A stretch of 64,000 nt of DNA, from NCBI GenBank assembly GCA_047495785.1, contig JBLDXI010000054.1, positions 1,798,001-1,862,000 on the forward strand, read 5' to 3'. The notes under the pieces are model-generated. The model saw nothing but the letters and a program-made list of their open reading frames with translations, did no database searches and had not been told where the DNA came from. The position numbers and the translations under genes are program-made. Shown here piece after piece: positions 14,251-52,811 of the stretch (position 1 is its first letter; every line of letters starts with the position of its first letter). The DNA comes from Lepidodermella squamata (Eukaryota; Animalia; Gastrotricha).

Positions 14251-14593
14251 TGTCAGTGTTGTACCATTTATTTCAACGTTTTGGTTTTAAGATGGATTTT
14301 TTTTCGTGAAATGACTCTTCCCATGTGATTTTTCGCATTTTTAGGGGCATAGACCCACGTAACAGGAGAGGGTAACAGCTTCCTCCCGAGTACTATGTAA
14401 CATAGAGCCCACGATACGGCCAGTTTCTTGGAAAAATCTCGAAACTGGCCTCCTCTAGGGCTCTATCTATACACGATACAGAAGATACGATACAGATCTG
14501 TACATATAACTACCCCAAATTGTGTTGATATAGTTTTCAGGATTTGGCTGTTATAGACCTGCCATAAACGAAATTATGACTCGTTGTGACCTG

Positions 14594-16981: not shown

Positions 16982-17166
16982 CTCTGTCAAATATGTTGAG
17001 GATGGGAGTTTTAGATGAATGTATTGCTGTAGGAGAGTACACAATGTGAACCGGAAATGCGTAATCGAAACGTAAATAAAGCGGAGCCATCGGTGCCAGC
17101 CCATTTTTTAATTTCGCAAAACTGCAAGCGCACATTATATTTCATATAATGTATTTTTATTAGACA

Positions 17167-18520: not shown

Positions 18521-18779
18521 CAATTGCTAAAATGCATCTCTTCAAGACATCTCAAATGTATGTATTAATCGATACACATTGACAACAGGTGTTTATTCAG
18601 CATTAATTATAAATCGCCCATAATTTTGTCGCGTTACTCATGCGGAACTTAATCTCTATTTACTTAAGAATAGGTAAATACCAACTAGCTGTGATATACT
18701 GATCGATCTTGAACAGATTTAGCTGGAATTTGTTCGACAAAAAATGTCCAGAGGGTTCGTGCCAACATTTTTTATTACT

Positions 18780-20118
18780 TCAAGTCGAAATAAGCGCAAA
18801 AATGCTCAAATCAGCTAGAGCTTTCACGAAGAAAATCGATGTGTAGAAAATGAAATCCAAAATTCGAATCCTTGAAATCACCATAGGCATCTTAGTGAAT
18901 GGGAAATGCTTGTTAAACTTAAGATCAGACATGTAATAAGACTTGTCAGCCAAATCATTAGCAATCAAAGCATAGACAGTGATAACAAAAGCAGCTGTTA
19001 GTTGAAACGCAAGGAAAAACTCAATGTTCGACACTAAAGCAGACTTTGGAGTGTCTTTTAGGATCTCAGCCAAGAGTAGGACATCGGCCAATAGTACTGT
19101 CGTGCAAAACACCGCTCGGTCAGGGTGTTTAGCCGGCATCCAAACTGACAGCAGGCTCAGAATTTGTAGGACAAGGCAGGGTAAGACGATATTATTCAGA
19201 TAAATGCTTGATTTTCGGCGGATTACGAATGTTATAACAGCTCGGTCGTAGGTGAAATTATCGGCCACAAAAACTTCAGTTGTATTATAGGTCCGAACAT
19301 CCGATAGCTTCCAAACCTCGGAGGGACTGATGAAGTCATCAGTTGTCATGGACAAGCCTTGGTCTTTGAGGAACAGTCGTATCTTGGATTCATCATCCCA
19401 CGATTCGAGGATCATGCTGCAGGTTTGTATGTCAAAAGGAAACTTTTGAAAATCGAGTTCACAGAAGACGGAGAAAGTTGACATTATTTGCCATGAAACT
19501 GTCCCATCCGAATAAAAGAAAGTTAAAGTCTCCTTAGCCAGGCTAAATAGTCACAGATATTAAATAACAGCTAAGAGAGCTGCTACTAACTTACCTATCA
19601 AATGGCATAACATCGCTTATCGCATTGTTTATGGCAAGACCAGGGTACCACACTTCAGACGATCTCATTTTGAAGTAAGGAATGTGGCTGTAGTTGGTAT
19701 GGGTCCATACCGTGCAAGGATGTTTCCAAGAGAAATCGACCTCGCCAACAAAGGAAAACCTTAAAAAGCCAAATTTTGAGATGGATTTCCCTTTGATCTA
19801 GGTTAAAACTAACTGTTGCTCTCGGTCTTTAATACCCCGGAACCGTAGGGGCTGGAAATTGACTGATACGTGAACTGCCTGCGAATAATTCCTGAGAGGT
19901 CTAGCGTTAGATTTCAAATTGCATTTCGACACGTAGCTCTCAATGAAAATCCTTTCCTCTGCCACAAAACTTGTGAGAGTGTCAAGATCGCCACATGGAG
20001 TCGAGCAGTTATTGATAACAGCTTGATACGGGTGGTTAAGCCTCAACGAGGTTTGGCTTGGCTTTCCTTGAATAGGAGTCAGCCAATCGATGAAAAAAAG
20101 TAACGGCACTACTATCAT
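18780..20118 (-). CDS. Divergent Cys-loop pLGIC subunit G5, intact, 3 exons
   Basis: Cys-loop CELDFQKFPFDIQTC, ESWD, M2 DRAVFCTTVLLADVLLL. Two roughly 50-nt introns at the same positions as G4. Confidence 0.9.
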
Positions 20119-20291
20119 GGTTTCTATTATAATGAAACATGTGTCTTTGCCACCATTTGATCATCCCCCTTAAGAATTGATTTTCTTCTCAGAGCTCACT
20201 CAATAATGCATAGGGTGATCGATCTCATTTATTTTTTATCAATTTAAGAAACTTTATTCATATACAGCAATTAACGGAGATTTATTTTTGT

Positions 20292-21712
20292 CTATGACGT
20301 TATCAGACCAAATATGATAAAATCGGAAATTAACATGACGAACCCGGTGGCGCTATAGAAACAAATGTCAATAAATCTATTGCGCGAGAATGAGTTTTTG
20401 AACGAAAGTGTAATTTTGGCATCCTTCATGAAGTAGTCACGTGGGCTCAGCTCGTTGGTGATCAGGGCGTAGACGGTAATTACAAAGCTTGAGGCGAGCT
20501 GCACGCCGAAAAAGACGACCACGTAGGCTATTTCGGCAGATTTTGGCATAGAACTCGTAATGATTGATTGCAAAACCACATAAGCCAATAGCACTGAGAA
20601 AAAATCGTAAAATTACTTATTGAATAAGGTTAAATCGTCAAATCACCTGTTATGCAAAATACAGCTCTATCCGGGTGATGGCCAGGCATGAAACCAGACA
20701 TCAGAATCAGAAATTGAAGCACAAAAGCAGACAGGAAAATGTTGACCATATAGCTTTTGTACTTCCTCGCAAAATCGAAGGTAACAATGACTTGATCGTA
20801 GACTAACGGACTACCAGCGTAAGTTCTGGTCTGGTTTCTCGCAGCGGCATCGTGAAGCTCCCAAATATCAGCTTCTGTGATGAAATCGTCAAAGTCGATA
20901 TCGAGGCCTTTGCCCCTCAGGAATAGTCGGATAATTCGAGTGTTTTCCCAAGATTCGAGGGTTATGCTGCATTCCTGTCGGTCAAATGGGAACTTTTTGA
21001 AGTCGAGTTCGCAAAACACGGAGAATAGTGACATAACTGGCCACATTACGGTTCCATCAGCATAAAAGTAGATTTGACTCCTCTTCGCAATGCTGGAAGA
21101 TTGAATTTTCAAGTTTTTAGGATCAAAGATCAAAGTAAACTTACTCATCAAATGGAGTGATTTCACTGATAGCATTGTTAATGCTCATAGTGGGGTAGTA
21201 GGTTTCTTCAGCTGTCATTCGGAAGTAATCAATGTTTCCGAAAGATGTGTCAACCCAGCTGGTGCAAGGATGGTCCCATCGGAGATCTATTTCACAAACA
21301 AGATTGTACCTGAAAGAGAAGAAATCCTATTTAAACATCGCTGCATTTATTTCTAAACTTACGTTTGCTCCCGATCCTCCAGGCCACGGAAAAACAGGGG
21401 TATGTAATTGACGTTAACCATTAAAGGCTCGGAGTAATTCTTGAGAGGTCGAACTTTGGCAGCCAAGTCGCATTTGGAAATGACAGTTTCTCGTAAAATG
21501 GCCTCGTCAGCTTTGAAGGTCTCTTCCTCGGTTTCGTTCTCTGCGTGAGACTCAGATGCATCAACGACAGGCTCCGGCATAGCTGAGGCGATGTCTGTGA
21601 TTGATTCTGCCGTCATGTTCCCATCAAAATCTTGTTTCGATGCCACATATTTTGAAATTGAGCAAAGTAAGGCAACTATTAAAAGTTTAGAGCCAATTTT
21701 CCAGAGCAGCAT
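20292..21712 (-). CDS. Divergent Cys-loop pLGIC subunit G6, intact, 4 exons
   Basis: Signal peptide plus acidic N-terminal extension, Cys-loop CELDFKKFPFDRQEC, ESWE, M2 DRAVFCITVLLAYVVLQ. Three short introns. Confidence 0.9.
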
Positions 21713-25297: not shown

Positions 25298-27793
25298 ATG
25301 ACTAAACTTCTGTCCAAGTTCGAAATGCTAGTTTTGCTGGCTATTCTCTCTTTAGACTTGGCGATTGGAGCTGAGAAGCCCTATCGGCTCTCTCTCCTTG
25401 CTATGATGCCTTTCACGGGAACTGAACCTAGGGATGGTAAAATCTGCAAGGCCTCAATGGAGCTGGTAGCAGAATTAGCAAACAAACGATCCGATTTCCT
25501 GCCAAACTATCGCATCGAGATGAAATTCGATGACGAAGCGTTCGGAAGCATGCGAACACCGCTGAACATCGTAAAATTTAGCCAGAAATTCGAGGAATCA
25601 ACTTACGCCGAATTTCAATCGCCGTTATCAGTTGGGCCACTACTAAGTGACGGTTGCAGACGCTTGGCTGCACTAATTCATCATTTCGATATGGTCGCGG
25701 TTGGCCTAGGCTGCATGGTACCATCTCTAACCGCTAATCGCATGGTGTATCCGAATTTCTATCGACTACAAATCGGCGGAGAAGCGTCGATCTACGCACG
25801 GCTCACTTTTCTAACAAAGATAGGAAAGTGGAAGCGAATTGGGATATACACGAATACGAACAACCTAATGGACTACTCCCTGGCTTTGATGACTCAAAAG
25901 TTGGCGATTGAATCAGGTATCAAAGTGGATTTCTTCGACATAGTTTTCGAGGTAACTTCCGCGTCAATCGAATCGTTGAAAACTAGCGATGTTCGTGTGA
26001 TTTTTTTCGATCTAAATTTTCCAATCATGGTACAGCAATTCTTGTGCGAAACCTACAACCAAGGTATCTCTGGAGATCGGTATGTCTTGATAGGACAGGC
26101 GAATGCATATATTGATCCGAAACTGTCACCCGAGCGGATTAGCCCTACATGCACGCGTGATGTTTTGTATAAGCAAGTTGAACGTACTGTCTGGTTAGGC
26201 GCGGCTTTGGACGCTGCGGGGGTTAATTATGGAACAACTGCATTAGGTTACGATCTTAAGACATTCGATGAACTAATTGACGCCAAGACGAATCGTTCGA
26301 GATCCCCAGACTACGCATTCCGTCACCGTTGCTCGGATGGACTTTTACAAGGTTTAATCGCGATGGATAAAGCTGAGAAAGTTCTGAACTCGAAGAATTT
26401 GAGTTTGAAAGATTTCAAGAACGAAAAGTCAGAGGTATTAAGTGCTGTGAACTCTAGTCTAGCTGAGACAGACTTCCTATCACTGCGTGTTGGTCAGCTT
26501 AAGTACTCGAAGCGGGTCGAATTTGATGACGAGCCTCAATTTGTCAGTTTTTGGACGCTTGCGACTGGAATTCGAGTTACATTCAAGGTCACTCATAACT
26601 CTGCGTTCGATTTCGCCGATCTTAGCTCGTACAACATTTTCGGAACACCTCCTTCATACTACGTACTCTCTAAAGACAGGGCTCGGGAGATTTTTCATTG
26701 GCGCAAATTTCCTATCGAACTTTCAATTCTCGTATACACTCTAGGGACAATTTCGGTTTTTGGCATGTTAGTTTTCACGCTAAAATCAGCTGTTTTGCGC
26801 TATAATAAGGGGTCCTTGCCCTCTGAACTCGAACTTTCCCCAATGTTGATACTTCTCGGCTGCGTCTTGACAAACATTAGTGCAATTCTTGTAGCTAATA
26901 GAGCAATCAGTGGAATAACTTGTATTATCAAAGTTATATCTGGAAACGTTGGACTTGCTTTGATGAATGGAGCCCTGATTGGCTTAGTTAACCTTCTCCC
27001 TATATTTCGGTCTGTGGGAGGGGTTAAGCTACGATATGAAAAGTTTGTCCTCTTCTTCAAGGAGCAAGGTGTTCTCTCGCGAAACACAATCAAAGAGCAG
27101 GAAATTTTCGTCGCCATCTTTGCTCTAATCCATTTAGGTTTCATCGCCGTTGTGACTGTTATTTGGCTTTGTATTGAGAATATTTTCGAAGTAGAGTTCA
27201 AGGCTAAACCAAGCTATGATCCAGCTTCAGATACTATTTGGCATACTATTATTGAAATCTGCTCCACTTCTGATAGCGTTTTGGCAGCTTTCGCCATCAT
27301 TCACATAATCATAGCCTCATTTGGAGCTTTGCAAGCTTTTAAGGCTCTAAGACTAGTCAAGCGATACGATGGTTTATTCTTGAGACCTCATTCAAAAGCT
27401 GCTGGCTTTGCGCTGGCAAATAACGCTACAATTCTCGCGGCGGCTATTTCGATCATCGCGATTTTGAACGATCCGATTTACGCCGAAATCGCGACTTCAT
27501 TTTCCCTGATTATAGTTGCCGATTTATCAGCGATATTCGCGATATTGCCAACTACGAAATGGCGCTTGTTTGAAGATGAAGTGAGTAGCAAGATATCTGT
27601 GGCATCTGCGCCGCGCGGTCGAAATTCCCTGCGCAGAACATCGAATGAAATTCGGCAGAGTGTTGTGATAGCTGCTAGGCCAAGATCTAATACGGCGGAA
27701 TCGCGGGTATCTGCATTGAGAATTTCTACTGTGTCTGTGCTAGAAAGGAAGCGCACAAGCACGCTCAGCACTGATTTATTCAAGGATCACTGA
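25298..27793 (+). CDS. Class C GPCR, GABA-B-like (Venus flytrap plus 7TM, no Cys-rich domain), intronless
   Basis: Signal peptide, ANKRSDFLPNYRIEM, YPNFYR, KWKRIG, seven hydrophobic helices, Ser/Arg-rich C-tail. Confidence 0.85.
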   Translation: MTKLLSKFEMLVLLAILSLDLAIGAEKPYRLSLLAMMPFTGTEPRDGKICKASMELVAELANKRSDFLPNYRIEMKFDDEAFGSMRTPLNIVKFSQKFEESTYAEFQSPLSVGPLLSDGCRRLAALIHHFDMVAVGLGCMVPSLTANRMVYPNFYRLQIGGEASIYARLTFLTKIGKWKRIGIYTNTNNLMDYSLALMTQKLAIESGIKVDFFDIVFEVTSASIESLKTSDVRVIFFDLNFPIMVQQFLCETYNQGISGDRYVLIGQANAYIDPKLSPERISPTCTRDVLYKQVERTVWLGAALDAAGVNYGTTALGYDLKTFDELIDAKTNRSRSPDYAFRHRCSDGLLQGLIAMDKAEKVLNSKNLSLKDFKNEKSEVLSAVNSSLAETDFLSLRVGQLKYSKRVEFDDEPQFVSFWTLATGIRVTFKVTHNSAFDFADLSSYNIFGTPPSYYVLSKDRAREIFHWRKFPIELSILVYTLGTISVFGMLVFTLKSAVLRYNKGSLPSELELSPMLILLGCVLTNISAILVANRAISGITCIIKVISGNVGLALMNGALIGLVNLLPIFRSVGGVKLRYEKFVLFFKEQGVLSRNTIKEQEIFVAIFALIHLGFIAVVTVIWLCIENIFEVEFKAKPSYDPASDTIWHTIIEICSTSDSVLAAFAIIHIIIASFGALQAFKALRLVKRYDGLFLRPHSKAAGFALANNATILAAAISIIAILNDPIYAEIATSFSLIIVADLSAIFAILPTTKWRLFEDEVSSKISVASAPRGRNSLRRTSNEIRQSVVIAARPRSNTAESRVSALRISTVSVLERKRTSTLSTDLFKDH

Positions 27794-28889: not shown

Positions 28890-31148
28890 ATGAATAACCT
28901 TTTCACGGTAAGAATTACGATGGCACTGTTCAGCTTCCAAGCCTTCTCCGCTGCTACAAAGCCTTTCAACATGTCCATCTTAGGTATTGTTCCCAACTTC
29001 GGAGCCATGTGCAAGCTGGGCACTGATCTTGTGATTGAGACTATCAATGAGCGTTCGGATATTCTCCCCGAATACAACATCGTAATGGAATGGAAGGACG
29101 AAGTCGATCCGGCTATTGGTTACTCACCACTTGTCGAATTTCTGAAATTTAGAGAATCTCCACCGAATGATAACACCTTTCAAGCTCCGCTGTATCTCAG
29201 CGGATTCTACTCCAGCGGAAATATCCCTCTTGGACGAACTCTACACCACTTTGATTCTGTCGGTATATGCTTTGCGTGCGGATCTCCAGTTTTAGTAAAC
29301 CGCAAAGCATTTCCAAATTTGTACCTAACAGTGACTTCAAGTGATATTGTGGTGTCAGCTTATGTCAAATTTATGAAGGTGATCGGGAAATGGACAAGGA
29401 TTGGGATATTAACAACTGTTCTAAGTGACTACGACTTCATGACCGCGAAATACTTCTACCAGTTCGCGAACGATGAAAATATGACGATACCTTACTTCAA
29501 CGCTGTTTTAGGAATCGATAGTTACGTCATTGAAGAAATAGTGAATAATGACCTTCGAATCATCTTCTTACCCCTGAGCATTTCCCCGATGATTTGGTCT
29601 TTCCTCTGTCTCGCATACAAACGTGTGTTGACAGGGCCTCGTTACATGTTCTTCGCCGATTCTTTCACAGCTCAAAATCCAGAAAGCATTCCTAAAACAG
29701 ACATCGTAGAAAAAGATTGCACCAGCAAGATTCTAGCGGAGCAGTTCAAAAGTGTAATCTTCGCAGGGCAAGAATTGTCGCCTTTCGACAAGTCTCGGAA
29801 ATCTGAGATGGGATTTTCAATTAAAGAATTCGACTCACGGATCGATGCTAAACTTGGATTCCACAGTGAAGACAACACCCTGGCTTACTTGATGAAGGAA
29901 TAGAATACCTCGATCAAGACGCATAGCAGCAGGAAACAAGTCGCTAAGGTGATGAATGAATCAGTTTTAGCCTCAAATCGCGCCGGTTTTCGACATCAGT
30001 TGCGCTACAACCAGCGTGGAGCTAATGATGAAGACATTGTCACTTTCATGCGATGGAATGGATATAAATTTCTCACCAATTAACAAAGCCAGCCGAAAAA
30101 TCAGGGTTTCACTATTGAGACTGCACCTTCTGGTCTTGCCTTCGAAACATGGTTTGGCGGTCGCCCAAAAGATGCAGCATGGCAGCGAATCATTGTTGAT
30201 GGAGTCTCAAAACCTGTTGCTATATCAGTGTTCATTTTCAGTGTAGCTGTCTCGTCTGCTCAAGTTGTATCAATCGTTTTGCCAATATCCCTACAAAGAA
30301 TTAGGCTATATGGCTCGCTGGCAATAGCGAAACTATGTTGCATTGTTGCATGCACGTTGATGAATGTGGGATCAGTGCTAACTGTCATAGAAACAACGGG
30401 AGCAATTCAAGTTAGTAGAATCGTTGTTTTCACAACCTCTCTATCTTTCATCAATGGAATCGTCAGCTTTCGAGCAATCAACCTATTTCGAACAAGCTGT
30501 CAGGCTGTAAATGCTCTGAAGAGCCGACCTCTCTCCAATGGCCGTATCGCCCTGCGTAGGGAAAATTCCAATCAAATCAAGGCTGCCGTTCAAGAAATGG
30601 AAATTGGTGCTTCAAACTCATTGATAAAGCGCTCCCTTTGCTTTCTAGGATTGAATTTAGCTGTTGTGATAATTTGGCTTTCAAGTGATGGTTTCATTTG
30701 CACATCCATCCCAAAAGACTCTGGATCATATTATGACCTAGTTTCCGACACTTACTTCTCAATTGAGCTGCGTCGATGTGGCGTGACATGGAATACTTCG
30801 ATGATATTGGTTTTAGCCGGCATTCAAGTTGCCCTCATGGTTCTAGGCTGCATCCAGGCTGTTCGACTCCGGCCTTTAGTTGAGGTTCTCAAAAATCACG
30901 TTACTTTGCCGTCTGCGTCCTTAATTACAAGATTAGCTAGTATGAACGCTCTGGTGCTTTTCGTTTGCGTGTTTGTTTTGGCTATCGCTACTTCATCGCA
31001 GAAATTGCAACAGATTTTCGTGGCTTATGGAGCTCTGACTCTTTCTACATCAACTTCGGTCATTTTGCTATTTATGGATCTGAAAATGATCTTCTTCAAA
31101 CCGCAAAGCAACAACCGCTCATCGCGAAATGTTTCCATGGGATTGTAA
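28890..31148 (+). pseudogene. Class C GPCR pseudogene, duplicate of 38565-40874
   Basis: In-frame 57-nt deletion near 29890 (loses CHDTAVTGIMALQDTNLLL), TGG>TAG at 29901-29903, TAC>TAA at 30081-30083. Confidence 0.9.
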
Positions 31149-32681: not shown

Positions 32682-33130
32682 CATAGCAGATTTAATTATT
32701 AAAAAGATCGAATCTGCCGGGCGCTCTCATGTGCTCGCAAACCAAGCCATCTGTAAAATAAATTTATTGGGCACATGAAAAAATGTGTAAATATACATGG
32801 TATATCAATGATTGAAGTTGAAGCTATGAACAACTGCGGAACCCTTGTCAGTATTTGCGCTTACGGTAACATAAAAACTGGTAAAATAACATTTTCGAAC
32901 GAATATTGCAACCTTTCCCGGCAGCAGTCGGTTGCATATTCTAAAGCAAGGGATCTTCTCAGAGACCACAGAGTGAATATTGTCATTCTAGCAGCAGTAA
33001 TACAGTGATAACTTGGACTACCGCCCTGGACCCAGATCGTCAAGAGAGAAAAACAAATTTCGTGAATTTACGAGTATTATACATCACCAAACGTCTGCAG
33101 AAATTCTGAGGAAATTTGATCTCATACAAG

Positions 33131-35270
33131 ATGGTCACTAAACACTGTATTTTGGTCTTATTCGCCTGCATTACATGTTCGGGGGGCGAAACGATGCCCG
33201 AAATGCTTACTTCGCTACCACGACTGGATAGTCTTCTCTTCTACTTCCCGACCGGTCTTATTTGGAAAATCCTTGTTTTCGACAAGAACGGCAATACCAA
33301 TACGTTTGTCACGAACCCTCGGTCATCGATGACCAAACCTGGTGGGCCTTATGGAGGTGGGTCGTATACGACACCTATAAATGGTAACGGGCTAGCTATA
33401 TCTGAATTTCCAGCAATGACTGAGCTGACCATCGCCTTTTACTACTTCGGACCGTGCGATCAAAATGCAGCAGTTATCATGTCGATGTTTGTGAACATAT
33501 ATTGCAGCGCTAATAACTTTCGTGTCCGCGATGGCTTGGGAAATCTATTGTCGTATAACTTTCCGTATACGACGCCGAACGAATGGCAATTGGCAATCTT
33601 TACATACAACAACGTTTCAAAACAACTGTCCTACTACAAACAGACTCTCGCTGATCTTACACCAACGTCCCTTCCACAAATTGATGTAAATTTGCAGTCG
33701 TCAACTTCTGGAGAAGTTCAGGTCGGAACCGTGCATGATGGACATGATTTTATAAACATGAATGAGGCGACTCAAAGAATTGCATGCGTAAGCTACCATT
33801 CAGTCGTACTGACAATCGAGGAAATGGCGAGATTGTCAGTAGCATGTAGCCAATCGCAAACAACAACTACTTCAACTGAACAAGTCCCTACTACAACGAC
33901 AACAACCTTGGCACCAAGCGAAGCGACTACTACAACATCGGGTACAACTTTCCAGTCTATTTCAGTTTCAGATCCGATGACATCAACGCAGGGAAGCCAG
34001 GAAACCTCAGAGAAGCCGGTAGCTTCAAGTTCGAACTTAGAAACTGCATCTTCAACAACATTGACAACGACGCCTGCTAATACCTCATTTATTGAATTGA
34101 CCGCAAGCCTAGCAACGCCCCAGCAGGCTTACCCAACTTCGACTGTTGATGGCGAGCTAAGATTAGGTAGCACGCGATCTGCCCAAAGCCTAATCGAGTA
34201 TTTAGATGACTTCAAAGAGCCACCCCCAAGCCGAGCCTTTGATACAGCCGAGAATGTCCTGAAAAATTGCGACCACTTCGAAAATAGCAGATTTTCTCCA
34301 CCCCAAATCGACTTGGAGAAACCTAATATTGTCAACATCACATTTGAAGTCCCCAGCCTGTTAGAATTATCTACCTCCGATGATACAATATCAGTTAGCG
34401 GCATTGTGCTTATGTCATGGAGAGTCAACACAGATTTACGTTGCTAAGCCTGATCAAATGTGGTTGCCGCAAATAAGATTTGTAAACAGTGCTCATTTGA
34501 ATATCTACATGAAGAATGTAGCTGTCGGGGACGATTTCTTGGTAACTATGGACGGAGCAGGTTTGGAGTTGGAGCCAAACAAAACCTTCAACTTCTACTG
34601 GACAAGGGAAGGCTTCTTCAAAGCCGATCGCATGCAGATCATTACGGATTTCCCATTCGATACTCAGACATGCATTTTCGAGTTTAGTCTCACGAGATCT
34701 CGTAGAATCTTGACATTCGCCGACCTGCCGACTTTTCTCTGGCGTATCGGGGCAGTTAGTAACACTGAATGGGTTGTCAAGGATCTCTCAAGTCGTTTGT
34801 CCTGGACACGCTTTAACGGATTCAATGTGACCACCGCTGTGTTCGAAGTCACCCTAAAGCGGCTTCCGAGGTATTATATCGACAATCTATATCTGCCAAC
34901 AGCAATTCTGGGTGGGCTAGACCTTGCAACGTTCTTCATGGCCGCTGCTATGCCTGAACGACCATCCTTCACCGTGACCATCCTCTTGGCAATGGCTGTA
35001 TCACAAACGGAGTTAATCAGCGGGTATGCAAGTGCGGATAGTACTATACTCAGCAGTTACATGCAAATGATGGCTTGGTTCTCGGCTGCGGTCACCCTTT
35101 ACCAAATGATTGCTCTGTGGCTAGTACGTTCTGTGTTTGTGGGGAAACGCACGATGAAGAGGCTGCTGCGGGGCCACATCAGTCTGGTCAGGCTTATTGA
35201 TGCTATAGCCTTCGTCGCAGCTTTGGCATTTTTCTGCTTCGCCAACGGCTTCGTGCTCAGCAAGTATTGA
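33131..35270 (+). CDS. Chimeric pLGIC G7: signal peptide, LamG/pentraxin-like domain, Thr/Ser stalk, Cys-less pLGIC; one frameshift at about 34423-34447
   Basis: LamG-like pattern ELTIAFYY...EWQLAIFTYNNVSKQLSYY...IACVSYHSVVLTIEEMARL. About 100-aa T/S-rich stalk. Channel motifs MWLPQIRFVNS, TDFPFDTQTC, LKRLPRYYIDNLYLP, PERPSFTVTILLAM, four TM. Confidence 0.75.
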
Positions 35271-36234: not shown

Positions 36235-36891
36235 TTATCTCTCTTTGAGCATTCTTTGTGCACCACCCAGGCCCGCAGCTCAATTTCGTTGAGCTTCTTT
36301 GAGCACTCCGTTGAGCAGCGTTGTGCACATTGAGCACAAAATGAGACTTTTCTTTAGGCACGTTGCGCATCTTTAAGCCGCCTTCAAGCACTCGTTGAGC
36401 GGCTATTGAGCACCGCGTTCAGCACCAGATTAAGCACCAGTCGTCAATGACACAATTCAATTAAAAAAAAATCAGTCTCGGGCGGGAATTGAACCAGTGA
36501 CCATTGCGCCACTGGTTCCTCATAAATGGATACTATTAAAAAATCGACTTATCGATAATTTCATTTGTTAACAATTTTGCAAGTTTTGCAGTTTTTTGTA
36601 ATTGCAAGACTCCGCAACGAAAAAGAAATTGGGAAAAAAATATTATAAAAAACAATCAGTTGGGTGCGGGAATCGAACCAGTGACCACTGCCCTCACACT
36701 CATTTTTTTCATGTCATGTCATCTTTGGAGTGCTCAACGATAACCTGTTATCCTTTTGAGCACAAGTTGAGCACTTTCGATAGGTTCCGGCTGAGCATAA
36801 ATTGCGCACAAATTGAGCACCCATTGAGCAATCATTGAGCATTTTGAGCACAAGTTGTGCAATTGAGCAAAAGTGCTCAAAGGAGAGATAT
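36235..36891. mobile_element. MITE with TIRs, many TTGAGCA repeats and two tRNA-like B-box units
   Basis: TATCTCTCTTTGAGCA versus TGCTCAAAGGAGAGATA. Minus-strand GGTTC(A/G)ATTCCC at 36484-36495 and 36668-36679. Confidence 0.7.
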
Positions 36892-36937: not shown

Positions 36938-37143
36938 AGCTTTGTGAAGAGTGTCTAGCCCTATCCGAATGCTTTCAGGACATATCGGGCCCATAGATAG
37001 GAATTGACCACCTGAAACAAAAATCAGCTTTTTCTTCGGCAGCTTTGTGAAGAGTGTCTAGCCCTATCCGAATGCTTTCAGGACATATCGGGCCCATAGA
37101 TAGGAATTGACCACCTGAAACAAAAATCAGCTTTTTCTTCGGC
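36938..37143. repeat. Perfect 103-bp tandem duplication
   Basis: AGCTTTGTGAAGAGTG...CTTTTTCTTCGGC at 36938 and again at 37041. Confidence 0.95.
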
Positions 37144-37379: not shown

Positions 37380-38150
37380 CGGAATACGCGTCAATGGAAA
37401 ACTAACATTGCTCGACTATCATTACCGTACCTTGGCGAAGACATTGTGAACGCACTTAGAGAACCAGTTAAAAAACTAACGTCGTTCTTTCAAAGAGATA
37501 TCCAGCTATGCTGGAAATCCACACCTCTCAAACTAGTTTTTACTACACGTTTTGGTGATTACTTACATACTAACTACAAATGCTGGGGTTGCTTATGTGG
37601 CCTATCCAAGAAATCTACCTCATTGTGTCCTATACAACACACCATCTATCAACAAACATGCAATACCTGCCAAGAAATCTACATTGGCTGCACGAGCCAA
37701 CCTGTCGCATACCGTACTACACAACACTGTTACGCTTCTAATAAAACTAAAGATGGCACCATTGGGGAACACTTCAAAACCTGTACTAAATCTGATCCGC
37801 CGTTCTCTACTCAGATCCTACATCATTGTAAATTACCTTATCGTTTACTTCGTACTGAAAAACTATTTATCCAAGCTCTTAACCCTAGCCTTAATAACTA
37901 CTGTAACAAATAATTACTCATACAATTTATTTTAATAGATCATGATTTCTGTCTTTGATTCTTTTGATTAATTTTTGATAATTACACGAAAAAAACGATT
38001 GGTGACAAAATTGGTAAACTTGTTTTAATATTAGTCTCGAAACTTGATTGTTGATTTCCTTACTTGTTGTCAGACCCTGAAGATGGCTGAATAAAAGCTG
38101 AAACATGTCGGATTAGGCGACTGGTTTTTCATTTTTGAGTCATAATTATG
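37380..38150 (+). mobile_element. Penelope-like retroelement, 5'-truncated (GIY-YIG endonuclease end plus pseudo-LTR)
   Basis: ORF 37446-37913 with IYQQTCNTCQEIYIGCT..R..QH, IGEHF, E.LFIQALNPSLN. Hammerhead motif downstream. Confidence 0.85.
38074..38112 (+). ncRNA. Minimal type I hammerhead ribozyme of Penelope pseudo-LTR type
   Basis: CC-CTGAAGA-TGGCT(gaataaa)AGCT-GAAA-CATG-TC-GG: CUGANGA and GAAA boxes, palindromic minimal stem III ACATGT, GUC cleavage triplet. Confidence 0.7.
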
Positions 38151-38564: not shown

Positions 38565-40874
38565 ATGAATAAGCTTTTCATAGCAAGAATAGCGCTGTTC
38601 AGCTTCCACGCCTTCTCCGCTGCTACAAAGCCTTTCAACATGTCCATCTTAGGTATTGTTCCCGACTTCGGAGTCATGTGCAAGCTGGGCACTGATCTTG
38701 CAATTGATACCATCAATGGGCGCTCGGATATTCTCCCCGACTACAACATTGTAATGGAATGGAAAGACGAAGTCAATCCGACTTCTGGTTACTCGCCACT
38801 TGTCGAGTTTCTGAAATATATAGCTTCGCCTTCGAATGATAACAGCTTTCAAGCTCCACTCTACCTCAGTGGCTTCTTCTCTAGCGGAAATATTCCTCTT
38901 GGACGAACTCTACACCACTTTGATTCTGTCGCAATATGTTTTGGGTGCGGATCTCCAGTTTTAGTAAACCGCAAAGCATTTCCGAATCTGTACCTAACAG
39001 TGACATCAAGTGACATAGTTGTGTCGGCTTACGTCAAATTTATGAAGGTAATTGGGAAATGGACAAGGGTGGGGATACTAACAACTGTTCTAAGTGACTA
39101 CGACTTCATGACCGCAAAATACTTCTACCAATTTGCAATCGATGAAAATATGACGATACCTTACTTCAACGCTGTTTTGGGAATCGATAATTACGTTGTT
39201 GAAGAAATAGTCAGTGATGACCTTCGAATCATTTTTTTACCCTTGAGCATCACCCCGATGCTTTGGTCTTTCCTATGCCTCGCGCACAAGCGTGGGTTGA
39301 CAGGGCCTCGTTACATGTTCTTCGCCGATTCCTTCACAGCTCAGAATCCAGAAAGCATTCCTAAAGCGGACCTTTTAGAAAAAGATTGCACCAACAAGAT
39401 TCTAGCAGAACAGTTCAAAAGCATAATTTTTGCAGGGGCGGAATTGTCGCCTTTCGACAAGTCTCGGAAATCTGAGTTGGGATTTTCAATTCAAGAATTC
39501 GACTCCCTAATCGATGCTAAGCTTGGATTCCACAGTGAAGACAACACCCTGGCTTACTTATGCCATGATACTGCTGTGACGGGAATTATGGCCCTTCAAG
39601 ACACCAACTTGCTGTTGATGAAGGAATGGAATACTTCGATCAAGGCTCATAGCAGCAGAAAACAAGTCGCTAAGGTAATGAATGAATCAGTTTTAGCCTC
39701 GAATCGCGCCGGATTTCGACATCAGTTGCGCTACAACCAGCGTGGAGCTAATGACGAGGACATTGTCACTTTCATGCGATGGAATGGGCATAAATTTCTA
39801 ACCAATTACCAAAGCCAGCCGAAGAAGCAGGGTTTCACTATTGAAACTGTCCCTTCTGGGCTTGCCTTCGAAAAATGGTTCGGCGGTCGGCCGAAAGACG
39901 CAGCAGGGCAACTCATCGTCGTCGATGGAGTCTCAAAACCCGTTGCTATATCAGTATTCTTTTTCAGTGGGGCAGTCACATCTGCTCAAGTTACATCAAT
40001 CTGCTTGCCAATATTACGGCGAAACATAGGGCTATTCGGCTCGCTGACAATAGCGAAACTGTTTTGCATTGCTGCATGCATTTTGATGAATGTGGGATCA
40101 GCGCTAGCTGTCTTAGAAACAACGGGAGCAATTCAAGTTAGCAGGATCGTCGTTTTCACAACATCCGTGTCTTTCGTCAATGGAATCGTCAGCTTTCAAG
40201 CGATCAGCTTATTTCGAACGAGTTCTCAGGCTGTAAATGCTTTTAATAGCCGACCCCTCCCTAATGGCCGTATCGCCCTACGGAGAAAAAATTCCAATCA
40301 AATTAAGGCTGCCGTTCAAGAAGTGGAAATTGGCGCTTCAAGCTCGTTGATAAAGCGCTCCCTTATCTTTTTAGGGTTCAATTTAGCTGTTGTGATAATT
40401 TGGCTTTCAAGCGACGGTTTCAATTGCACATCCATTCCGAAAGACTCTGACTCATATTATGACCTGGTTTCGGACACTTACTTCTCGTTTGAGCTACATC
40501 AATGTGGGGTGACATGGAATACTTCGATGATGTTTGTTTTAGCCGGAATTCAAGTTGTACTCATGCTTCTCGGTTGCATCCATGCTGCTCGTCTCAGGCC
40601 TTTAGTTGAGGTTCTCAAAAATCACGTTACTTTGCCGTCAACATCCTTGATCACAGTATTAACTAGTATGAACACTCTGATGCTTTTCGTTTGCGTGTTT
40701 GCCTTGGCCATCGCTACTTCATCGCAGAAATTGCAACAGATTTCCGTGGCTTATGGAGCTCTAGCTTTTTCTGCATCAACATCGGCAATTTTGCTATTTA
40801 TGGATCTGAAAATGAATTTCTTCAAACCGCAAGACGAAAATCGCTTGTCGCTCAATGTTTCTGAGGGATTGTAG
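38565..40874 (+). CDS. Class C GPCR, GABA-B-like, intact, intronless
   Basis: Signal peptide, INGRSDILPDYNIVM, FPNLY, KWTRVG, seven TM helices, short C-tail. Confidence 0.85.
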   Translation: MNKLFIARIALFSFHAFSAATKPFNMSILGIVPDFGVMCKLGTDLAIDTINGRSDILPDYNIVMEWKDEVNPTSGYSPLVEFLKYIASPSNDNSFQAPLYLSGFFSSGNIPLGRTLHHFDSVAICFGCGSPVLVNRKAFPNLYLTVTSSDIVVSAYVKFMKVIGKWTRVGILTTVLSDYDFMTAKYFYQFAIDENMTIPYFNAVLGIDNYVVEEIVSDDLRIIFLPLSITPMLWSFLCLAHKRGLTGPRYMFFADSFTAQNPESIPKADLLEKDCTNKILAEQFKSIIFAGAELSPFDKSRKSELGFSIQEFDSLIDAKLGFHSEDNTLAYLCHDTAVTGIMALQDTNLLLMKEWNTSIKAHSSRKQVAKVMNESVLASNRAGFRHQLRYNQRGANDEDIVTFMRWNGHKFLTNYQSQPKKQGFTIETVPSGLAFEKWFGGRPKDAAGQLIVVDGVSKPVAISVFFFSGAVTSAQVTSICLPILRRNIGLFGSLTIAKLFCIAACILMNVGSALAVLETTGAIQVSRIVVFTTSVSFVNGIVSFQAISLFRTSSQAVNAFNSRPLPNGRIALRRKNSNQIKAAVQEVEIGASSSLIKRSLIFLGFNLAVVIIWLSSDGFNCTSIPKDSDSYYDLVSDTYFSFELHQCGVTWNTSMMFVLAGIQVVLMLLGCIHAARLRPLVEVLKNHVTLPSTSLITVLTSMNTLMLFVCVFALAIATSSQKLQQISVAYGALAFSASTSAILLFMDLKMNFFKPQDENRLSLNVSEGL

Positions 40875-42113: not shown

Positions 42114-45100
42114 CTAACTCGTGCTGGACATGCTTTCTCTAAGAAATTGCGCTAGGGCTACATGCCCCGCCTTCTCAGCTAGAGTCAAGGCAGTTTCGCC
42201 ATCATCGTTCACACATTTAATCATTTCAGGATCCTTCATCACTAGGAATTGCGCTACTTCCATATGACCGCCCATGGCAGCTGCCATTAGAGGTGTTGTC
42301 TTCTCTTCTGAAGAGCAGCTGGGAACATATGCGATGCATTTGCCATACAGAATTTCGACACATTCCATGTTGCCAACGAGAGACGCCATGAAAAGAGGCG
42401 TGTTGTCATCAACCGAATCAGGAACGGTATCCAAACAATCAGGATGTTGCTCCAAAAGGTATTTCAAGCATTCAACGGAACTCAGACTAGCCGCCATTAA
42501 ACATGCGATAAATACATCAGCCTTATCATATTTTGGCAGAAGGTATTTAACCATTTCAAGCTTGTTCCATCGAGAAGCGTTAGCCAGCGCCGTTTCGCCA
42601 TTTGCGCCTTGTACTTTCACCATATCTGGGGCGATTTCGATTAGGTACTTGACGACATCCATGTACCCTTCACCTGCAGCTAATGACAGAGCTGCGCCTC
42701 TGTCGCGATGGAGTTGCCTAATAATTTCCGGCGCAGTTTCAGCTAGAAACTTGACGCATTCAAGCTTGCCACCCCTTACTGCATAAGCGAACAACCCATA
42801 CGTTTCCTCGTCTTGCTTCGTGACCTGGCTTGGGTTTTTGTTGGCAAGGTACTTCAGAACTTCTAGGTGGCCGTATCGAGCTGCGAACATCATAGCGTTC
42901 CGTCTCTCTTCATCGACGTATTCAAGCGATTTCGGCCACTTCTCAGCCGCGAATCGAACAATGTCGAGGTGGTTTCGTCTCGCAGCTGTGTAAAGAACTT
43001 CACCTTGCAAACTTTCGTCCAAGCATTGCTCAGCTAATTCTTGTACTCGTTTTTGATCGCCATTAAAGGCGGACAGAATTATTTCGGGAGTCTGCGATTC
43101 TTTTTTAAGAATTTTCTCTTCCCAGGCCCAGACTTGGTAGAACGGAATCCAAGGAGACAGGCGGGTCAGCAATGGGACGCGATCAAGACCATGCTTTTCA
43201 TAGGCTTTATCTCGTACCACATCCATAAACAAGCAGGAGTAGGTCTCGCCAGTCCTTTTTTCGGTTAGAACTTGAAACAAACCATCTCTGCCGAAGGCGT
43301 CTTCAACCTTAGCAAACAACTTCCTAAGCAGGCGATAACTCTCACTGGGAAGATATTGACCTCCCAAATGTGAGTGAAGATGCTTTTTCACCTTGGTAGT
43401 CCAGTTGACCTGATAAAGATACTGCACGAATGTCATGCCATCAGTCGCATTCGTTTTAGTCATGCATAACTTCCTAATGGTTTCGGGGTCAAGTTTCGCA
43501 ATGATGCGTTCTATCAGCATTTTCCGACGAAATTTGATGGCTGATAATAGGACAGCTAGGCCAGATTCGTTGCCAGCCTCACTTGAACCCATGGCACCAG
43601 TGGCGATGCTAATACGGATTTGCAGCAGACACGATTCATCCGAACCCTTTAGGTTGAAGTCTTTTTTCGCCTTCTCGAGGGCGGATTCGTAAAGCATCTG
43701 ATGCAGTAAGAACCGATCTTCAGTCGAATCGTCTATTTCATTCTCATTGTTCTCTTTTTCGTCTTCGTCAACCTCCTTAATTGCCTTCTTAACTCGTCTG
43801 ACCAATGATCGTTTCTCGAAGGCTCGGCAGATCCCACGCAGGCCGCACCTACTGTCTTCGTCCAGGTCGAAGCCCCATAGAATTCCAAGGTCGAAAATAG
43901 AAACTGGCTCGGCAGGGTTGAACAGCAGAAAGGCGTAGTAGAGACATCTGAGACTTGCATCCATTTGATCCAAACTGAACGTGAATAGGCTTGAAACAGT
44001 TTTGAACGATCTATTTTGAGTTTTCAGGTCACTGATTTTGTACTGTGGAGAGATAAGTCGTTTGTACTCTGACTTGATCTCGGCCTTATCTTCGCAGTTT
44101 GAGATTCTAGCAGCGATGAGACTGGCAATCAAAGGCAGCCCGCAGCATAGAGTTGCTAGTTTCATCAATTGGTCATCCATCAGAACATTCGAGAGTTTGA
44201 AGGTCGTTTTCAGCATAGTCTTGATACCAGCATCGTTCATTTCATCGACCCTTTCGACCTTCTGGACTATTGTGAAGTTTGCATCTAACACGGTTTGAGC
44301 ATCTCTTGTCACGATGAAACAGATGGGAGGGTCGTTGAACTTCTCGAGGAAGGAGAGTAACAACCGATAATTGAACATGTCATCCAAAACGAAAGCGACC
44401 CGCAGGTTTTTCTTTCGATAGTAGCTAGCAATGCTTTGCAGACTGGAAAACACGGCGCTGCGATCAGAATCCTCGGCTTCCTTCGCGAGATTCAATAACT
44501 TGTCAATAAAAGCTTTTTCATCGTAGCGTTCTCGCCAGTCGAAGCAATTTATCCAAATGGCTCGGTTGATATTGCATTCTCGAACAAAGTAGCCGAATTT
44601 TTCTTCACCGGTGACTAGACGAGCGACTAGGGTGGTTTTGCCAACTCCGCCATCACCGCACACAATAAGACAGCCTTCGTCAGGATTTTGAGCGACAAAC
44701 TTCATCTGAGCCAGGATTCGGTCTTCATCCTCTTGGCGACTGAAATATTTCGATTTTGAGAAGAATGGTACCCCAACTGATTTGAAGCTATCAGAGAGAT
44801 TAAGCTGGTTTACTTTTACCCTGATCTTACAACTTACTTCACTGTAGTTTTTTGCTCAATACTCCTCAGTCCGCTTTTGCTTGGAGACTGATTCTTGTGG
44901 TTACGGAGGAATTCGAGAATCTTTGCTGCAACATCATCGAATCGATCTCCTTCGCAGTAATCGAGTCTTAGTTGAGATTTGAAGATGAAAAGAAGCCATC
45001 CATCAGGCCTGTAACCCTTTTCGACCCGGATTGGCAGTATTTCCTTGTTCTTGTTAGCAGCGTACTCAATTTCACGTTTACAGTTAGCGCTATCCGCGTA

Positions 45101-49700: not shown

Positions 49701-50856
49701 TGTACCTTAGTATTTAATTGAGCTAACCTAGTGGTCAACCTGCTTGTAAAGCCAGGTCGCAACGATTGCATGATAGGAATGAGAATCATTTGCAGCATTA
49801 GCGCGAGAATTACTAGTTTGTGATTATCCGACGTCAGTAAATATGGTCCAGCGCTGTCGAATAAAATGAGCGCTACCATAGCAAATATTCCTGGAAAAAC
49901 TGATGCCATCAAAATAAGAAATGAAGCGAATGATTGCTTTGCTAGAAATAACTCTCGGGCAAGCCACTGAGCCTGCTGATTTTTTGACGACAAAGAAACG
50001 GGTGTGACTGTGTTACCCTTGTACGAAGCAGATGTACAGGGCCTGGAGCTTGTAGCACGAAGAGGGTTGCGATAGCGGGAAACGGTTTTATATATTTGCC
50101 TGGAATAAGTAAATGAATTGAGAACATGTTGCTACTAATGAAGAATCCTTACCAATAATTGTACCCCAGAAGGCCCTGAGAGAGAGAAACATTAGCCAAC
50201 GTGAATAATGGCCGGAATATTGAAGAATCAAGCCCGTCGGCAATTTTATGCTCGAATGGCGCGCAAAAAGCAGCGAACTCAGTTCCATTATCATTAATCG
50301 GCATCATTTGGAGACTAAAGCCGTAGGGATACAGCGTAACAGGAAAAGTAGTAAGCATGACGTAGATTAGCATAACTCCGGCTGAAGTAACAGTCCGTTT
50401 CAAGTTTATTCCCGATGTTGGAAGAGCCCGGGAGATGCAAATACGCCTTTCATAGCTTATTAACATGCAGACGCTCTGACTGTAGCAGCATGCGACGTAG
50501 TAGCCCCAGCCAAGCATCAGGCACGTCAAATCGCTGCCCTCAAAGTGGCCTCGTGGCGTGGTCAGCGCCATTAGGATTGTTTGGTTAATGCAGAAAATTG
50601 AGTTGGAGATACCGAGAAGCATGACGAGAAGTAGAAAATCTCGCCTAACACCTCGCCGCCAATAAATGTAGCCATTTACGGCGTTGCAAATGCAAACTGC
50701 CAATGCCACGAGGGCATAAAGGAAAGTATAGATTAGGCGATGAGAGAACGACTGAAATGGCGAATTGTAAAAACCGACGAACCAATATCTACCATTGTCA
50801 AAACCGCGGCCTGGCACGACTGCGTAAATCCATGATGAATCCGCAGACTTGTTCAT
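49664..50856 (-). CDS. Divergent class A (rhodopsin-like) orphan GPCR, 2 exons
   Basis: TM1 Asn (ICNAV), TM3 Cys and ISYERR (DRY equivalent), seven TM. Intron at about 50100-50152 gives GYNYW-QIYKTV in frame. Confidence 0.8.
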
Positions 50857-52490: not shown

Positions 52491-52811
52491 ACCGAAACGT
52501 CGTCTGTTTTCTAGAATCTGACTGCGAAATCAATGATGACGGGATATTTTCCTCACCGTTTGCCAGTTTCAAATTCAAGCGTGGCGAGCTCGAACATGTG
52601 CGAAGAGAATGATCGAATGAAATTTTAGGAACTCATGTGGAACATAAGATAAAGGATCAATAGCTTTTCGAAAAAACGTCCTGAGGCGGAAAGTGTAGGA
52701 TAGATGATTTTTAAAAGCAGTTCCTTTTCACTGACAGTAAAACATAAAACTAAATGTGTTCCAATTCATTCCATTCATTCAATCGATTCATTCCAATTCA
52801 ATCATATAATT

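What the first reader, a model, noticed from the sequence alone, without database searches (positions are those of the whole stretch)
33131..35270. Lectin-like domain on a mucin stalk fused to a Cys-less pentameric ion channel
Seen: one open frame runs from a signal peptide through a ~220-aa LamG/pentraxin-like domain and a ~100-aa Thr/Ser stalk into the pLGIC N-terminal helix and beta1-beta2 (LKNCDHF..RFSP..IVNITFEV..SWRV). The rest of the channel follows in the next frame. Known: animal pLGICs normally begin at the ligand-binding domain; large N-terminal add-ons are best characterised in bacterial pLGICs such as DeCLIC. Inference: a pentamer would display up to five lectin-like heads on glycosylated tethers, which could couple surface, glycan or mechanical contact to channel gating. 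I do not recognise this architecture.
Basis: partly seen in the sequence, partly recalled or inferred. Interest (0 to 1): 0.9.

Follow-up and report, generated by a model that had tools for sequence, protein, structure and literature searches.

The report
Broken lectin-domain ion channel gene
This is a single-exon gene for an acetylcholine-receptor-type ion channel subunit with a lectin-like domain and a sugar-rich tether at its front; the design is real, because an intact relative exists elsewhere, but the copy in this window is broken by a frame change and cannot make a channel.

Summary
From the ATG at 33131, one frame encodes a signal peptide, a ~220-aa beta-rich domain, a ~130-aa Ser/Thr-rich linker (41% S/T) and the first 60 residues of a pentameric ligand-gated ion channel (pLGIC) ligand-binding domain. 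It stops at 34447. The rest of the channel, from beta3 to M4, lies in the +1 frame up to 35270.

The fusion is genuine. The only relative among 1.84 billion representative proteins is P0003, an uninterrupted 702-aa ORF with the same domain order. It occurs in two independent metagenome assemblies that differ by three synonymous changes and no others inside the ORF.

A lectin-like (ConA-like) fold is moderately supported. P0003 hits Pfam Laminin_G_3 at E 0.002, below the curated cut-off. A mid-confidence AlphaFold model gives 304 Foldseek hits; the 50 listed are ConA-like jelly rolls or proteins containing one.

The window copy is damaged. The frame shifts within 34421-34430, 11-17 residues joining beta2 to beta3 are missing, the first Cys-loop cysteine is Arg, and the M2-M3 proline is gone. 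P0003 keeps all of these, so "Cys-less" is not a family trait. The most likely reading is a recently inactivated pseudogene of a rare, undescribed eukaryotic pLGIC family with an N-terminal domain. Gating by glycans or mechanical contact remains speculation.

The parts
33131..33187 (+). Start codon and signal peptide (19 aa, MVTKHCILVLFACITCSGG)
   Evidence: An in-frame stop lies just upstream (frame open from 33110). There is a hydrophobic N-terminus (Kyte-Doolittle 1.52). It aligns with the N-terminus of P0003.
33188..33850 (+). N-terminal extracellular domain, predicted ConA-like / LamG_3-type beta-sandwich (residues ~20-240)
   Evidence: 26-30% identical to P0003 residues 6-238 (BLASTP E 4e-13; phmmer E 3.5e-5 against 1.84 G proteins). 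P0003's domain hits Pfam Laminin_G_3 at E 0.0022, below the curated cut-off. The AF2 model of the P0003 domain (pLDDT 57, pTM 0.68) gives 304 Foldseek hits at E<=1e-3; the 50 listed are ConA-like jelly rolls or proteins containing one. The window domain itself has no Pfam hit, and its AF2 model failed (pLDDT 33).
33851..34240 (+). Ser/Thr-rich (mucin-like) linker, ~130 aa
   Evidence: Composition T 24%, S 17%, P 8%. There is no DNA tandem repeat. P0003 has a shorter Pro/Thr-rich linker at the same place.
34241..34420 (+). pLGIC ligand-binding domain, N-terminal helix and beta1-beta2, ending at the Trp codon 34418-34420
   Evidence: Aligns to P0003 310-375 (33% identity, E 2e-8). That part of P0003 matches Neur_chan_LBD positions 17-58.
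34421..34430 (+). The break: reading frame changes by +1. Relative to P0003 and solved nAChRs, 11-17 residues between beta2 and beta3 are absent. ORF1 then runs into a stop at 34445-34447.
   Evidence: The last residue homologous in frame 1 is W (34418-34420). The first clearly homologous residues in frame 2 are QIYV (from 34431). Both frames are open only over 34365-34447. There is no homopolymer and no room for an intron.
34431..34871 (+). pLGIC ligand-binding domain beta3-beta10 in the +1 frame, including the Pro-loop 34626-34673, which has Arg (CGC 34629-34631) in place of the first Cys-loop cysteine
   Evidence: 32% identical to P0003 385-666 (E 4e-46). Torpedo nAChR alpha E 6.8e-10. Pfam Neur_chan_LBD 18-19 bits, below the cut-off of 26. 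Cys-loop comparison.
34872..35270 (+). Transmembrane domain: M1 34872-34949, M2 34953-35024 (Glu at -1', Leu at 9'), M3 35046-35126, a 21-residue M3-M4 loop 35127-35189, M4 35190-35267, and stop TGA 35268-35270
   Evidence: Aligned to M1-M3 of Torpedo nAChR alpha and to P0003. Hydropathy, coordinates.

Best explanation
Window 33131-35270 holds one intronless gene of a rare family of pLGIC subunits from the nicotinic (cation-channel) branch. Its mature protein would begin with a secreted ConA-like (LamG_3-type) beta-sandwich, followed by a flexible, probably O-glycosylated Ser/Thr-rich tether, then an ordinary ligand-binding domain, four membrane helices and a very short cytoplasmic loop. The copy in this window is inactivated. 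Within 34421-34430 the frame shifts by +1, and the 11-17 residues that normally join strand beta2 to beta3 are missing. Translation from the ATG therefore ends at 34447 with no membrane segment. This copy also lacks the first Cys-loop cysteine and the M2-M3 loop proline. Shown: the colinear architecture, the frame change, the missing segment, the two lost key residues, and an intact relative that carries only synonymous differences between samples. Inferred: the intact family members form cation-selective pentamers (acidic residue at -1', Leu at 9'). These would not be gated by acetylcholine, because the loop B Trp is Arg and loop C has no Cys pair. Their tethered lectin-like heads would bind a glycan or protein partner, either to position the channel or to modulate it, as N-terminal domains do in some bacterial pLGICs. 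The window copy is best read as a young pseudogene or null allele.
For: Architecture: both halves are homologous to the single 702-aa ORF P0003 in the same order. P0003 is encoded without interruption on two contigs from different samples. Those contigs are 99.4% identical over 9.4 kb. They have 10 gap openings (37 gapped positions), all outside the ORF, and 3 substitutions inside it, all at third codon positions and synonymous. Channel identity: PDB hits to nAChR alpha, alpha7, DEG-3 and GLIC. Fold of the head. Break. Lost key residues that P0003 and two neighbouring paralogues keep. Over the same region, the window copy scores lower than P0003 against the family profile (18 vs 35 bits). Decay occurs locally: the class C receptor-like gene 2 kb upstream (28890-31148) is a broken copy of the intact gene at 38565-40874. 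Recent inactivation fits two facts: both frames are otherwise free of stops, and the window copy shows no excess of substitutions at conserved columns (12 vs 15, p 0.70).
Against: Apart from the one break, both frames are intact, so an assembly error or a null allele of a working gene cannot be excluded without reads. With only ~30% identity to P0003, the exact size of the missing segment is uncertain. The relative-rate count shows no general decay. The ConA-like assignment rests on a Pfam hit below the curated cut-off and a model of only mid confidence. No transcript, ligand or current has been examined. The source organism is unknown to me.
Confidence: 0.7

Rival explanations
1. The gene is intact in the organism, and the frame change is a sequencing or assembly error, or a rare null allele that happened to be sequenced. 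The true gene would encode a working NTD-pLGIC with an unusually short beta2-beta3 junction.
For: Apart from one site, 438 + 279 homologous codons are free of stops. There is no excess of substitutions at conserved columns compared with P0003. The site contains ACACAG, where loss or gain of a dinucleotide is conceivable.
Against: Even with the frame restored, 11-17 residues present in P0003 and in solved nAChRs would be missing. There is no homopolymer at the site. The first Cys-loop cysteine and the M2-M3 proline are also lost. A neighbouring receptor gene is also broken.
Confidence: 0.17
2. After the break, ORF1 alone is the functional product: a secreted lectin-like protein with a mucin tail. 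The channel half is a dead remnant.
For: ORF1 has a signal peptide, a complete N-domain and linker, and no membrane segment.
Against: ORF1 ends with 60 residues of a truncated beta-sandwich that could not fold on its own. ORF2 is still free of stops over 301 codons, which argues that the separation is recent rather than an established new gene. The exhaustive search found no stand-alone homologue of the N-domain.
Confidence: 0.05
3. The two frames are joined in the mRNA by a very short intron or by programmed +1 ribosomal frameshifting, so the full channel is made.
For: Several GT...AG pairs of length 3n+1 (10-55 nt) lie in the 83-nt overlap.
Against: Each such intron would be 55 nt or shorter. 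Each would also either remove residues that align with P0003 (beta2 through SW) or leave the junction even shorter. Homologous coding runs to 34420 in frame 1 and resumes at 34431 in frame 2. P0003 is intronless here. There is no slippery run or homopolymer.
Confidence: 0.03
4. The apparent fusion is an accident of adjacency: a lectin/mucin gene and a 5'-truncated channel gene that merely lie next to each other.
For: The window's N-domain has no Pfam hit, and the linker is of low complexity.
Against: The same frame continues from the linker into the pLGIC helix and beta1-beta2. P0003 has the same order in one ORF in two assemblies, with only synonymous variation.
Confidence: 0.02

Closest known systems
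DeCLIC and other prokaryotic pLGICs with an N-terminal domain (Hu et al. 2020; bioRxiv 10.1101/2025.02.24.640012)
   Same: A pLGIC whose ligand-binding domain is preceded by an extra extracellular jelly-roll beta-sandwich module and that has a minimal cytoplasmic loop. In DeCLIC the NTD modulates gating kinetics.
   Different: DeCLIC is bacterial and lacks the Cys-loop disulfide. It has two lobes packed directly on the ECD, with no long Ser/Thr tether. There is no sequence similarity: a profile of the N-domain finds nothing in the PDB at E<=10, and DeCLIC is not among the top 50 fold matches. The channel here belongs to the eukaryotic nicotinic branch, and P0003 has a true C-x13-C loop.
Expanded, intronless nAChR-like genes of invertebrates (Jiao et al. 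2019, PMC6896357)
   Same: Intronless, clustered and highly divergent. Many copies are silent or pseudogenes, some LBDs lack the Cys-loop, and a few gene models carry extra domains.
   Different: The extra domains reported there are dynamin and GAIN, taken from gene models. A LamG/ConA-like head on a tether is not listed. The organism here is unidentified.
'Secondary Cys-less' metazoan pLGICs (Jaiteh, Taly & Henin 2016, PMC4795631)
   Same: A member of the Cys-loop clade that has lost Cys-loop cysteine(s) while keeping the invariant Pro-loop proline.
   Different: Only one cysteine is lost here, in a copy that is also frame-shifted. Its relative P0003 keeps both. That survey discarded N-terminal extensions.
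ConA-like lectin modules: Laminin_G_3 (PF13385), CBM40 sialic-acid-binding modules, pentraxins
   Same: Predicted two-sheet jelly roll of ~200 aa. There is a weak profile match to Laminin_G_3 positions 45-150, and the best fold matches are CBM40 (6er3, E 5e-8) and related lectin-like domains.
   Different: The profile score is below the Pfam cut-off. There is no pentraxin signature. No ligand-binding residues can be assigned, and sequence identity to every fold match is 10-18%.

Membership tests
Pentameric ligand-gated ion channels (Cys-loop / Pro-loop superfamily) | Homology of the extracellular beta-sandwich to Neur_chan_LBD | tested here: met
   ORF2 vs solved nAChR alpha, E 6.8e-10. P0003 vs Pfam Neur_chan_LBD, 51 bits against a cut-off of 26. 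The window pieces alone are below the cut-off (18-19 bits) but are 32-33% identical to P0003.
Pentameric ligand-gated ion channels (Cys-loop / Pro-loop superfamily) | Four membrane helices with an M2 pore helix (9' Leu) and the invariant Pro-loop proline (FPFD) | tested here: met
   Alignment to Torpedo alpha through M1-M3. FPFDTQTC at 34650-34673. M1-M4 located. Pfam Neur_chan_memb itself gives no hit.
Pentameric ligand-gated ion channels (Cys-loop / Pro-loop superfamily) | An uninterrupted reading frame encoding LBD plus TMD | tested here: not met
   +1 frame change within 34421-34430 and a stop at 34445-34447. Met in the relative P0003.
Eukaryotic Cys-loop receptors | Cys-x13-Cys disulfide loop | tested here: not met
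   The window has Arg-x13-Cys (CGC 34629-34631; TGC 34671-34673). P0003 and the paralogues at 17 kb and 19 kb have Cys-x13-Cys.
Acetylcholine-gated nicotinic receptors | Aromatic box: loop B Trp and, in alpha subunits, the vicinal Cys pair in loop C | tested here: not met
   In the alignment to Torpedo alpha, the loop B Trp position is Arg (LTRS) in both the window and P0003. Neither has a Cys pair in the loop C region (Cys lists).
ConA-like lectin/glucanase superfamily, Laminin_G_3 (PF13385) | Profile match above the curated cut-off | tested here: not met
   P0003 1-245: 18.6 bits, E 0.0022, cut-off 27.6. Window domain: no hit.
ConA-like lectin/glucanase superfamily, Laminin_G_3 (PF13385) | Two-sheet jelly-roll fold | tested here: inconclusive
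   The AF2 model of P0003 22-243 is only mid confidence (pLDDT 57, pTM 0.68). Even so, 304 Foldseek matches have E<=1e-3, and the 50 listed are ConA-like modules or proteins containing one (TM 0.38-0.57). The model of the window domain failed.
Pentraxins | Pentraxin signature H-x-C-x-S/T-W-x-S/T | tested here: not met
   The regex is absent from ORF1 and from P0003. A Limulus pentraxin appears only as fold match rank 35.
Mucin-like domains | Long Ser/Thr/Pro-rich segment carrying dense O-glycans | not testable with these tools
   The composition fits (41% S+T over ~130 aa). There are no tandem repeats. Glycosylation cannot be tested here.
DeCLIC-type NTD-bearing pLGICs | Homologous NTD lobes | tested here: not met
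   The N-domain profile gives no PDB sequence hit at E<=10. DeCLIC is not in the top 50 fold matches. The resemblance is one of design only.

The most novel reading that the evidence does not exclude
Intact members of this family (P0003 and any undiscovered relatives) are eukaryotic pentameric channels whose orthosteric site no longer binds a small transmitter. In this reading, their five tethered ConA-like heads are the actual sensors, so that binding of a glycan or surface ligand, or pulling on the tether, gates a cation pore. That would be a new way of gating a pLGIC in animals.
Probability: 0.1. Interest if true: 0.85.

Novelty: new variant of a known kind. Interest (0 to 1): 0.55.

Why it matters
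N-terminal add-on domains in pLGICs have so far been described and studied only in bacteria. DeCLIC is the only case that has been partly characterised. A nicotinic-branch eukaryotic subunit with a lectin-like head on a flexible tether would extend that principle to eukaryotes. It also offers a concrete construct to test, the intact P0003 ORF, for asking what an extracellular add-on does to assembly, localisation or gating. The window copy itself matters mostly as a caution: it is a damaged member, and its unusual 'Cys-less' state is part of that damage rather than a design feature.

Tried and rejected
1. Word-indexed homologue searches with ORF1, ORF2 and P0003 found nothing beyond P0003 itself. 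The ORF1 search was probably swamped by Thr-rich words, and the ORF2 search could not see proteins longer than about 480 aa.
2. The exhaustive phmmer search with the N-domain gave two bacterial repeat proteins, P0001 (LRR) and P0002 (BACON), at E ~1e-6. I reject these as multi-repeat artefacts: each matches in 4-5 short stretches that lie in unrelated domains.
3. A JGI metagenome scan with the channel alignment and family-specific DNA pattern scans (WTREG, a fixed 40-nt gap, then PFDxQTC) of metagenome and prokaryote genome collections gave no further members.
4. Exact-protein look-ups of window ORFs, aimed at identifying the organism, found nothing on record. The sample names were not found in the literature.
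5. AF2 on the window N-domain failed, with pLDDT 33.
6. A PDB profile search with the N-domain gave no hit. tblastn of both N-domains against plasmids gave only noise.
7. A short intron or programmed frameshift at the junction is rejected on position and length.
8. A DNA tandem repeat underlying the stalk is absent.
9. A MAFFT alignment of window fragments to full-length P0003 (A1) scattered the N-domain fragment across the alignment and was not used.
10. A relative-rate count looking for general decay of the window copy was not significant, 12 vs 15, p 0.70.

Full report
**What is in the sequence**

The window is eukaryotic DNA of about 42% G+C, and its gene content points to an invertebrate animal. 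It carries multi-exon nicotinic-type pLGIC genes, class C receptor-like genes, an NB-ARC-ankyrin gene, and LINE, Ty3, THAP9-like, MULE and GIY-YIG elements.

- ORF1 runs 33116-34447, with its first ATG at 33131 and an in-frame stop just upstream.
- ORF2 is in the +1 frame. It is open from 34365 and stops at 35268-35270.

Thirty shuffles of the window never gave an open frame longer than 190 codons, so frames of 443 and 301 codons are not chance.

ORF1 reads, in order:
- a 19-residue hydrophobic signal peptide;
- a ~220-residue domain;
- a ~130-residue linker with 24% Thr and 17% Ser, not encoded by a DNA tandem repeat;
- a 60-residue segment ending in LMSW.

ORF2 aligns to Torpedo nAChR alpha from the middle of the ligand-binding domain through M1, M2 and M3 (E 6.8e-10). 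It ends with a short loop and an M4-like helix.

**Is the fusion real?**

I ran an exhaustive phmmer search with the N-terminal 242 residues against 1.84 billion representative proteins. It gave one credible relative, P0003, which is 702 aa and aligns over residues 6-238. The two other hits are bacterial repeat proteins matched in several short stretches, and I discount them.

P0003 has the same order of parts:
- signal peptide;
- a homologous N-domain (26-30% identity, BLASTP E 4e-13);
- a Pro/Thr-rich linker;
- a pLGIC whose LBD passes the Pfam cut-off (51 bits), followed by four hydrophobic helices.

ORF1's last 70 residues align to P0003 310-375 (E 2e-8). ORF2 aligns to P0003 385-666 (32% identity, E 4e-46).

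P0003 is a single uninterrupted ORF on two contigs from two different ENA metagenome assemblies. One contig also carries a LINE-type reverse transcriptase, so the source is eukaryotic. Both are about 39% G+C. The two contigs are 99.4% identical over 9.4 kb. All 10 gap openings (37 gapped positions) lie outside the ORF. The three substitutions inside it are all at third codon positions and synonymous. That is a small but consistent sign of purifying selection.

The architecture is therefore a real gene design, not an artefact of adjacency.

**What the head is**

The window's N-domain has no Pfam hit. P0003's domain gives Laminin_G_3 (ConA-like superfamily) at E 0.0022 and 18.6 bits, covering profile positions 45-150 of 151. 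This is below the curated cut-off.

AlphaFold2 on the window domain with a two-sequence alignment failed (pLDDT 33). With P0003 as the target it gave a mid-confidence all-beta model (pLDDT 57, pTM 0.68). Foldseek against the PDB returned 304 matches at E<=1e-3. The 50 listed are ConA-like jelly rolls or proteins that contain one:
- CBM40 sialic-acid-binding modules (best E 5e-8, TM about 0.5);
- the lectin-like subdomain of clostridial neurotoxin binding domains and of NTNH;
- the lectin domains of trans-sialidase and leech sialidase;
- a Limulus pentraxin;
- PAPP-A, whose N-terminal LamG-type module I take, from background knowledge, to be the matched part;
- the PilC minor pilin, whose lectin module I likewise take to be the matched part.

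These are resemblances of fold only, at 10-18% identity. No pentraxin signature is present. I rate the ConA-like fold as moderately supported, and membership of Laminin_G_3 as unproven.

**What the channel is**

The best solved relatives are nAChR alpha subunits, alpha7, DEG-3 and, more distantly, GLIC.

Both the window copy and P0003 have an acidic residue at -1' and Leu at 9' of M2, which fits a cation channel by inference from established pLGIC knowledge. In both, the loop B tryptophan position is Arg (LTRS) and loop C has no Cys pair. Acetylcholine is therefore unlikely to be the agonist. The cytoplasmic loop is very short, about 21 residues in the window copy and about 13 more in P0003. 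The neighbouring conventional paralogues also have short loops.

**The break**

- Homologous coding in frame 1 runs to the Trp codon 34418-34420. It resumes in frame 2 at QIYV, from 34431.
- Both frames are open only over 34365-34447.
- Between the corresponding Trp and QIYV, P0003 has about 20 residues. These align with the W-x-D-x-x-L-x-W-N...Y segment of alpha7 and DEG-3. The window has at most four, so the window is 11-17 residues short in addition to the frame change.
- There is no homopolymer at the site.
- Any GT-AG intron inside the overlap would be 55 nt or shorter. It would also remove residues that align with P0003.
- P0003 has no intron here.

The window copy alone also has Arg (CGC) for the first Cys-loop cysteine and lacks the M2-M3 loop proline. 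P0003 and the two neighbouring paralogues keep both. Over the same region it scores 18 bits against Neur_chan_LBD, where P0003 scores 35.

Against general decay, the two copies match outgroup-conserved columns equally often (12 versus 15 private matches, p 0.70), and neither frame has acquired a stop. Taken together, this looks like a recent inactivation.

The class C receptor-like gene 2 kb upstream (28890-31148) is likewise a broken copy, 87% and 81% identical to the intact gene at 38565-40874. Decaying duplicates are therefore a feature of this neighbourhood. An assembly error or a null allele of a working gene remains possible. I give that 0.17.

**How it most likely works**

For the family, and by inference:
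- The subunit is secreted into the membrane with the ConA-like head outermost.
- The Ser/Thr- or Pro/Thr-rich linker acts as an extended, probably O-glycosylated tether.
- Five subunits form a cation pore.
- The heads bind a glycan or protein partner, which either positions the channel or modulates its gating.

The nearest precedent for such modulation is the jelly-roll NTD of bacterial DeCLIC, which accelerates gating.

For the window copy, as shown: translation stops after beta2, so no channel can be made from this sequence as it stands.

**Comparison with what is known, and novelty**

- N-terminal domains on pLGICs are described for prokaryotes.
- Surveys of invertebrate nAChR expansions report intronless, clustered, often silent copies. 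Some lack the Cys-loop and a few have other domains (dynamin, GAIN).
- Secondary loss of the Cys-loop cysteines within the Cys-loop clade is also known.
- I found no paper that combines pLGIC with laminin G or ConA-like terms.
- I found no further family member in any collection I could scan.

I therefore class this as a new variant of a known kind: a eukaryotic, nicotinic-branch pLGIC with a lectin-like N-terminal domain, represented here by a damaged copy. The 'Cys-less' label and the idea of a functioning five-headed pentamer from this locus do not. The proposed glycan or mechanical gating is untested.

Noticed in passing
window 28890-31148 (+) and 38565-40874 (+); also 25298-27793 (+): These are intronless class C receptor-like genes with an ANF_receptor domain. 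The pair of ORFs at 28890-29903 and 30228-31148 is a broken copy (87% and 81% identical) of the intact 769-aa gene at 38565-40874. The target gene therefore sits between two duplicates, one of which is decayed. A third, more distant member (831 aa) lies at 25298-27793.
   Followed up: partly
window 5160-5603 (+) and 6883-21175 (-): This is a cluster of conventional pLGIC exons that pass the Pfam Neur_chan_LBD cut-off (two of them also the Neur_chan_memb cut-off), with normal C-x13-C loops. The ORFs at 17167-17970 and 18780-19484 carry the end of the LBD, M1-M3, a short M3-M4 loop and M4 in one exon, so a short cytoplasmic loop is common in this locus.
   Followed up: partly
window 42114-44705 (-): A single 862-aa ORF with an NB-ARC NTPase domain followed by many ankyrin repeats, which resembles an NLR-type immune receptor.
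   Followed up: no
window 50149-50856 (-) and 52704-53636 (+): Two divergently oriented ORFs, 40% identical to each other, with weak rhodopsin-type 7TM matches below the Pfam cut-off.
   Followed up: no
window 564-2419 (+), 9047-10468 (-), 37446-37913 (+), 57530-59560 (+), 60401-60976 (+): Mobile-element remnants: MULE/SWIM transposase, THAP9-like (TNP) transposase, a GIY-YIG nuclease ORF (possibly from a Penelope-like element), Ty3-type RNase H/integrase, and an ORF with a weak zinc-knuckle hit below the Pfam cut-off (possibly gag-like).
   Followed up: no
window 36938-37143 and 36462-36691: There is a perfect 103-nt tandem duplication at 36938-37040 and 37041-37143. There are also two 46-nt copies, 85% alike and 184 nt apart, containing GGGAATTGAACC. 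This resembles the 3' end of a tRNA-derived SINE, although ARAGORN finds no tRNA in the window.
   Followed up: no
L001 7197-9305 and L002 10001-12109: Two samples carry the intact homologue. Inside the ORF they differ by three substitutions, all synonymous. All 10 gap openings (37 gapped positions) in the 9.4-kb shared region lie outside the ORF.
   Followed up: yes
window 33785-33787, 33845-33847 and 34268-34270; P0003 residues 218, 238 and 322: Three cysteines are conserved between the two proteins: two at the end of the N-domain and one in the K-x-C-x-H-F motif just before the LBD helix. An odd conserved cysteine next to the LBD could link the head to the channel or link subunits to each other. 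This is untested.
   Followed up: no
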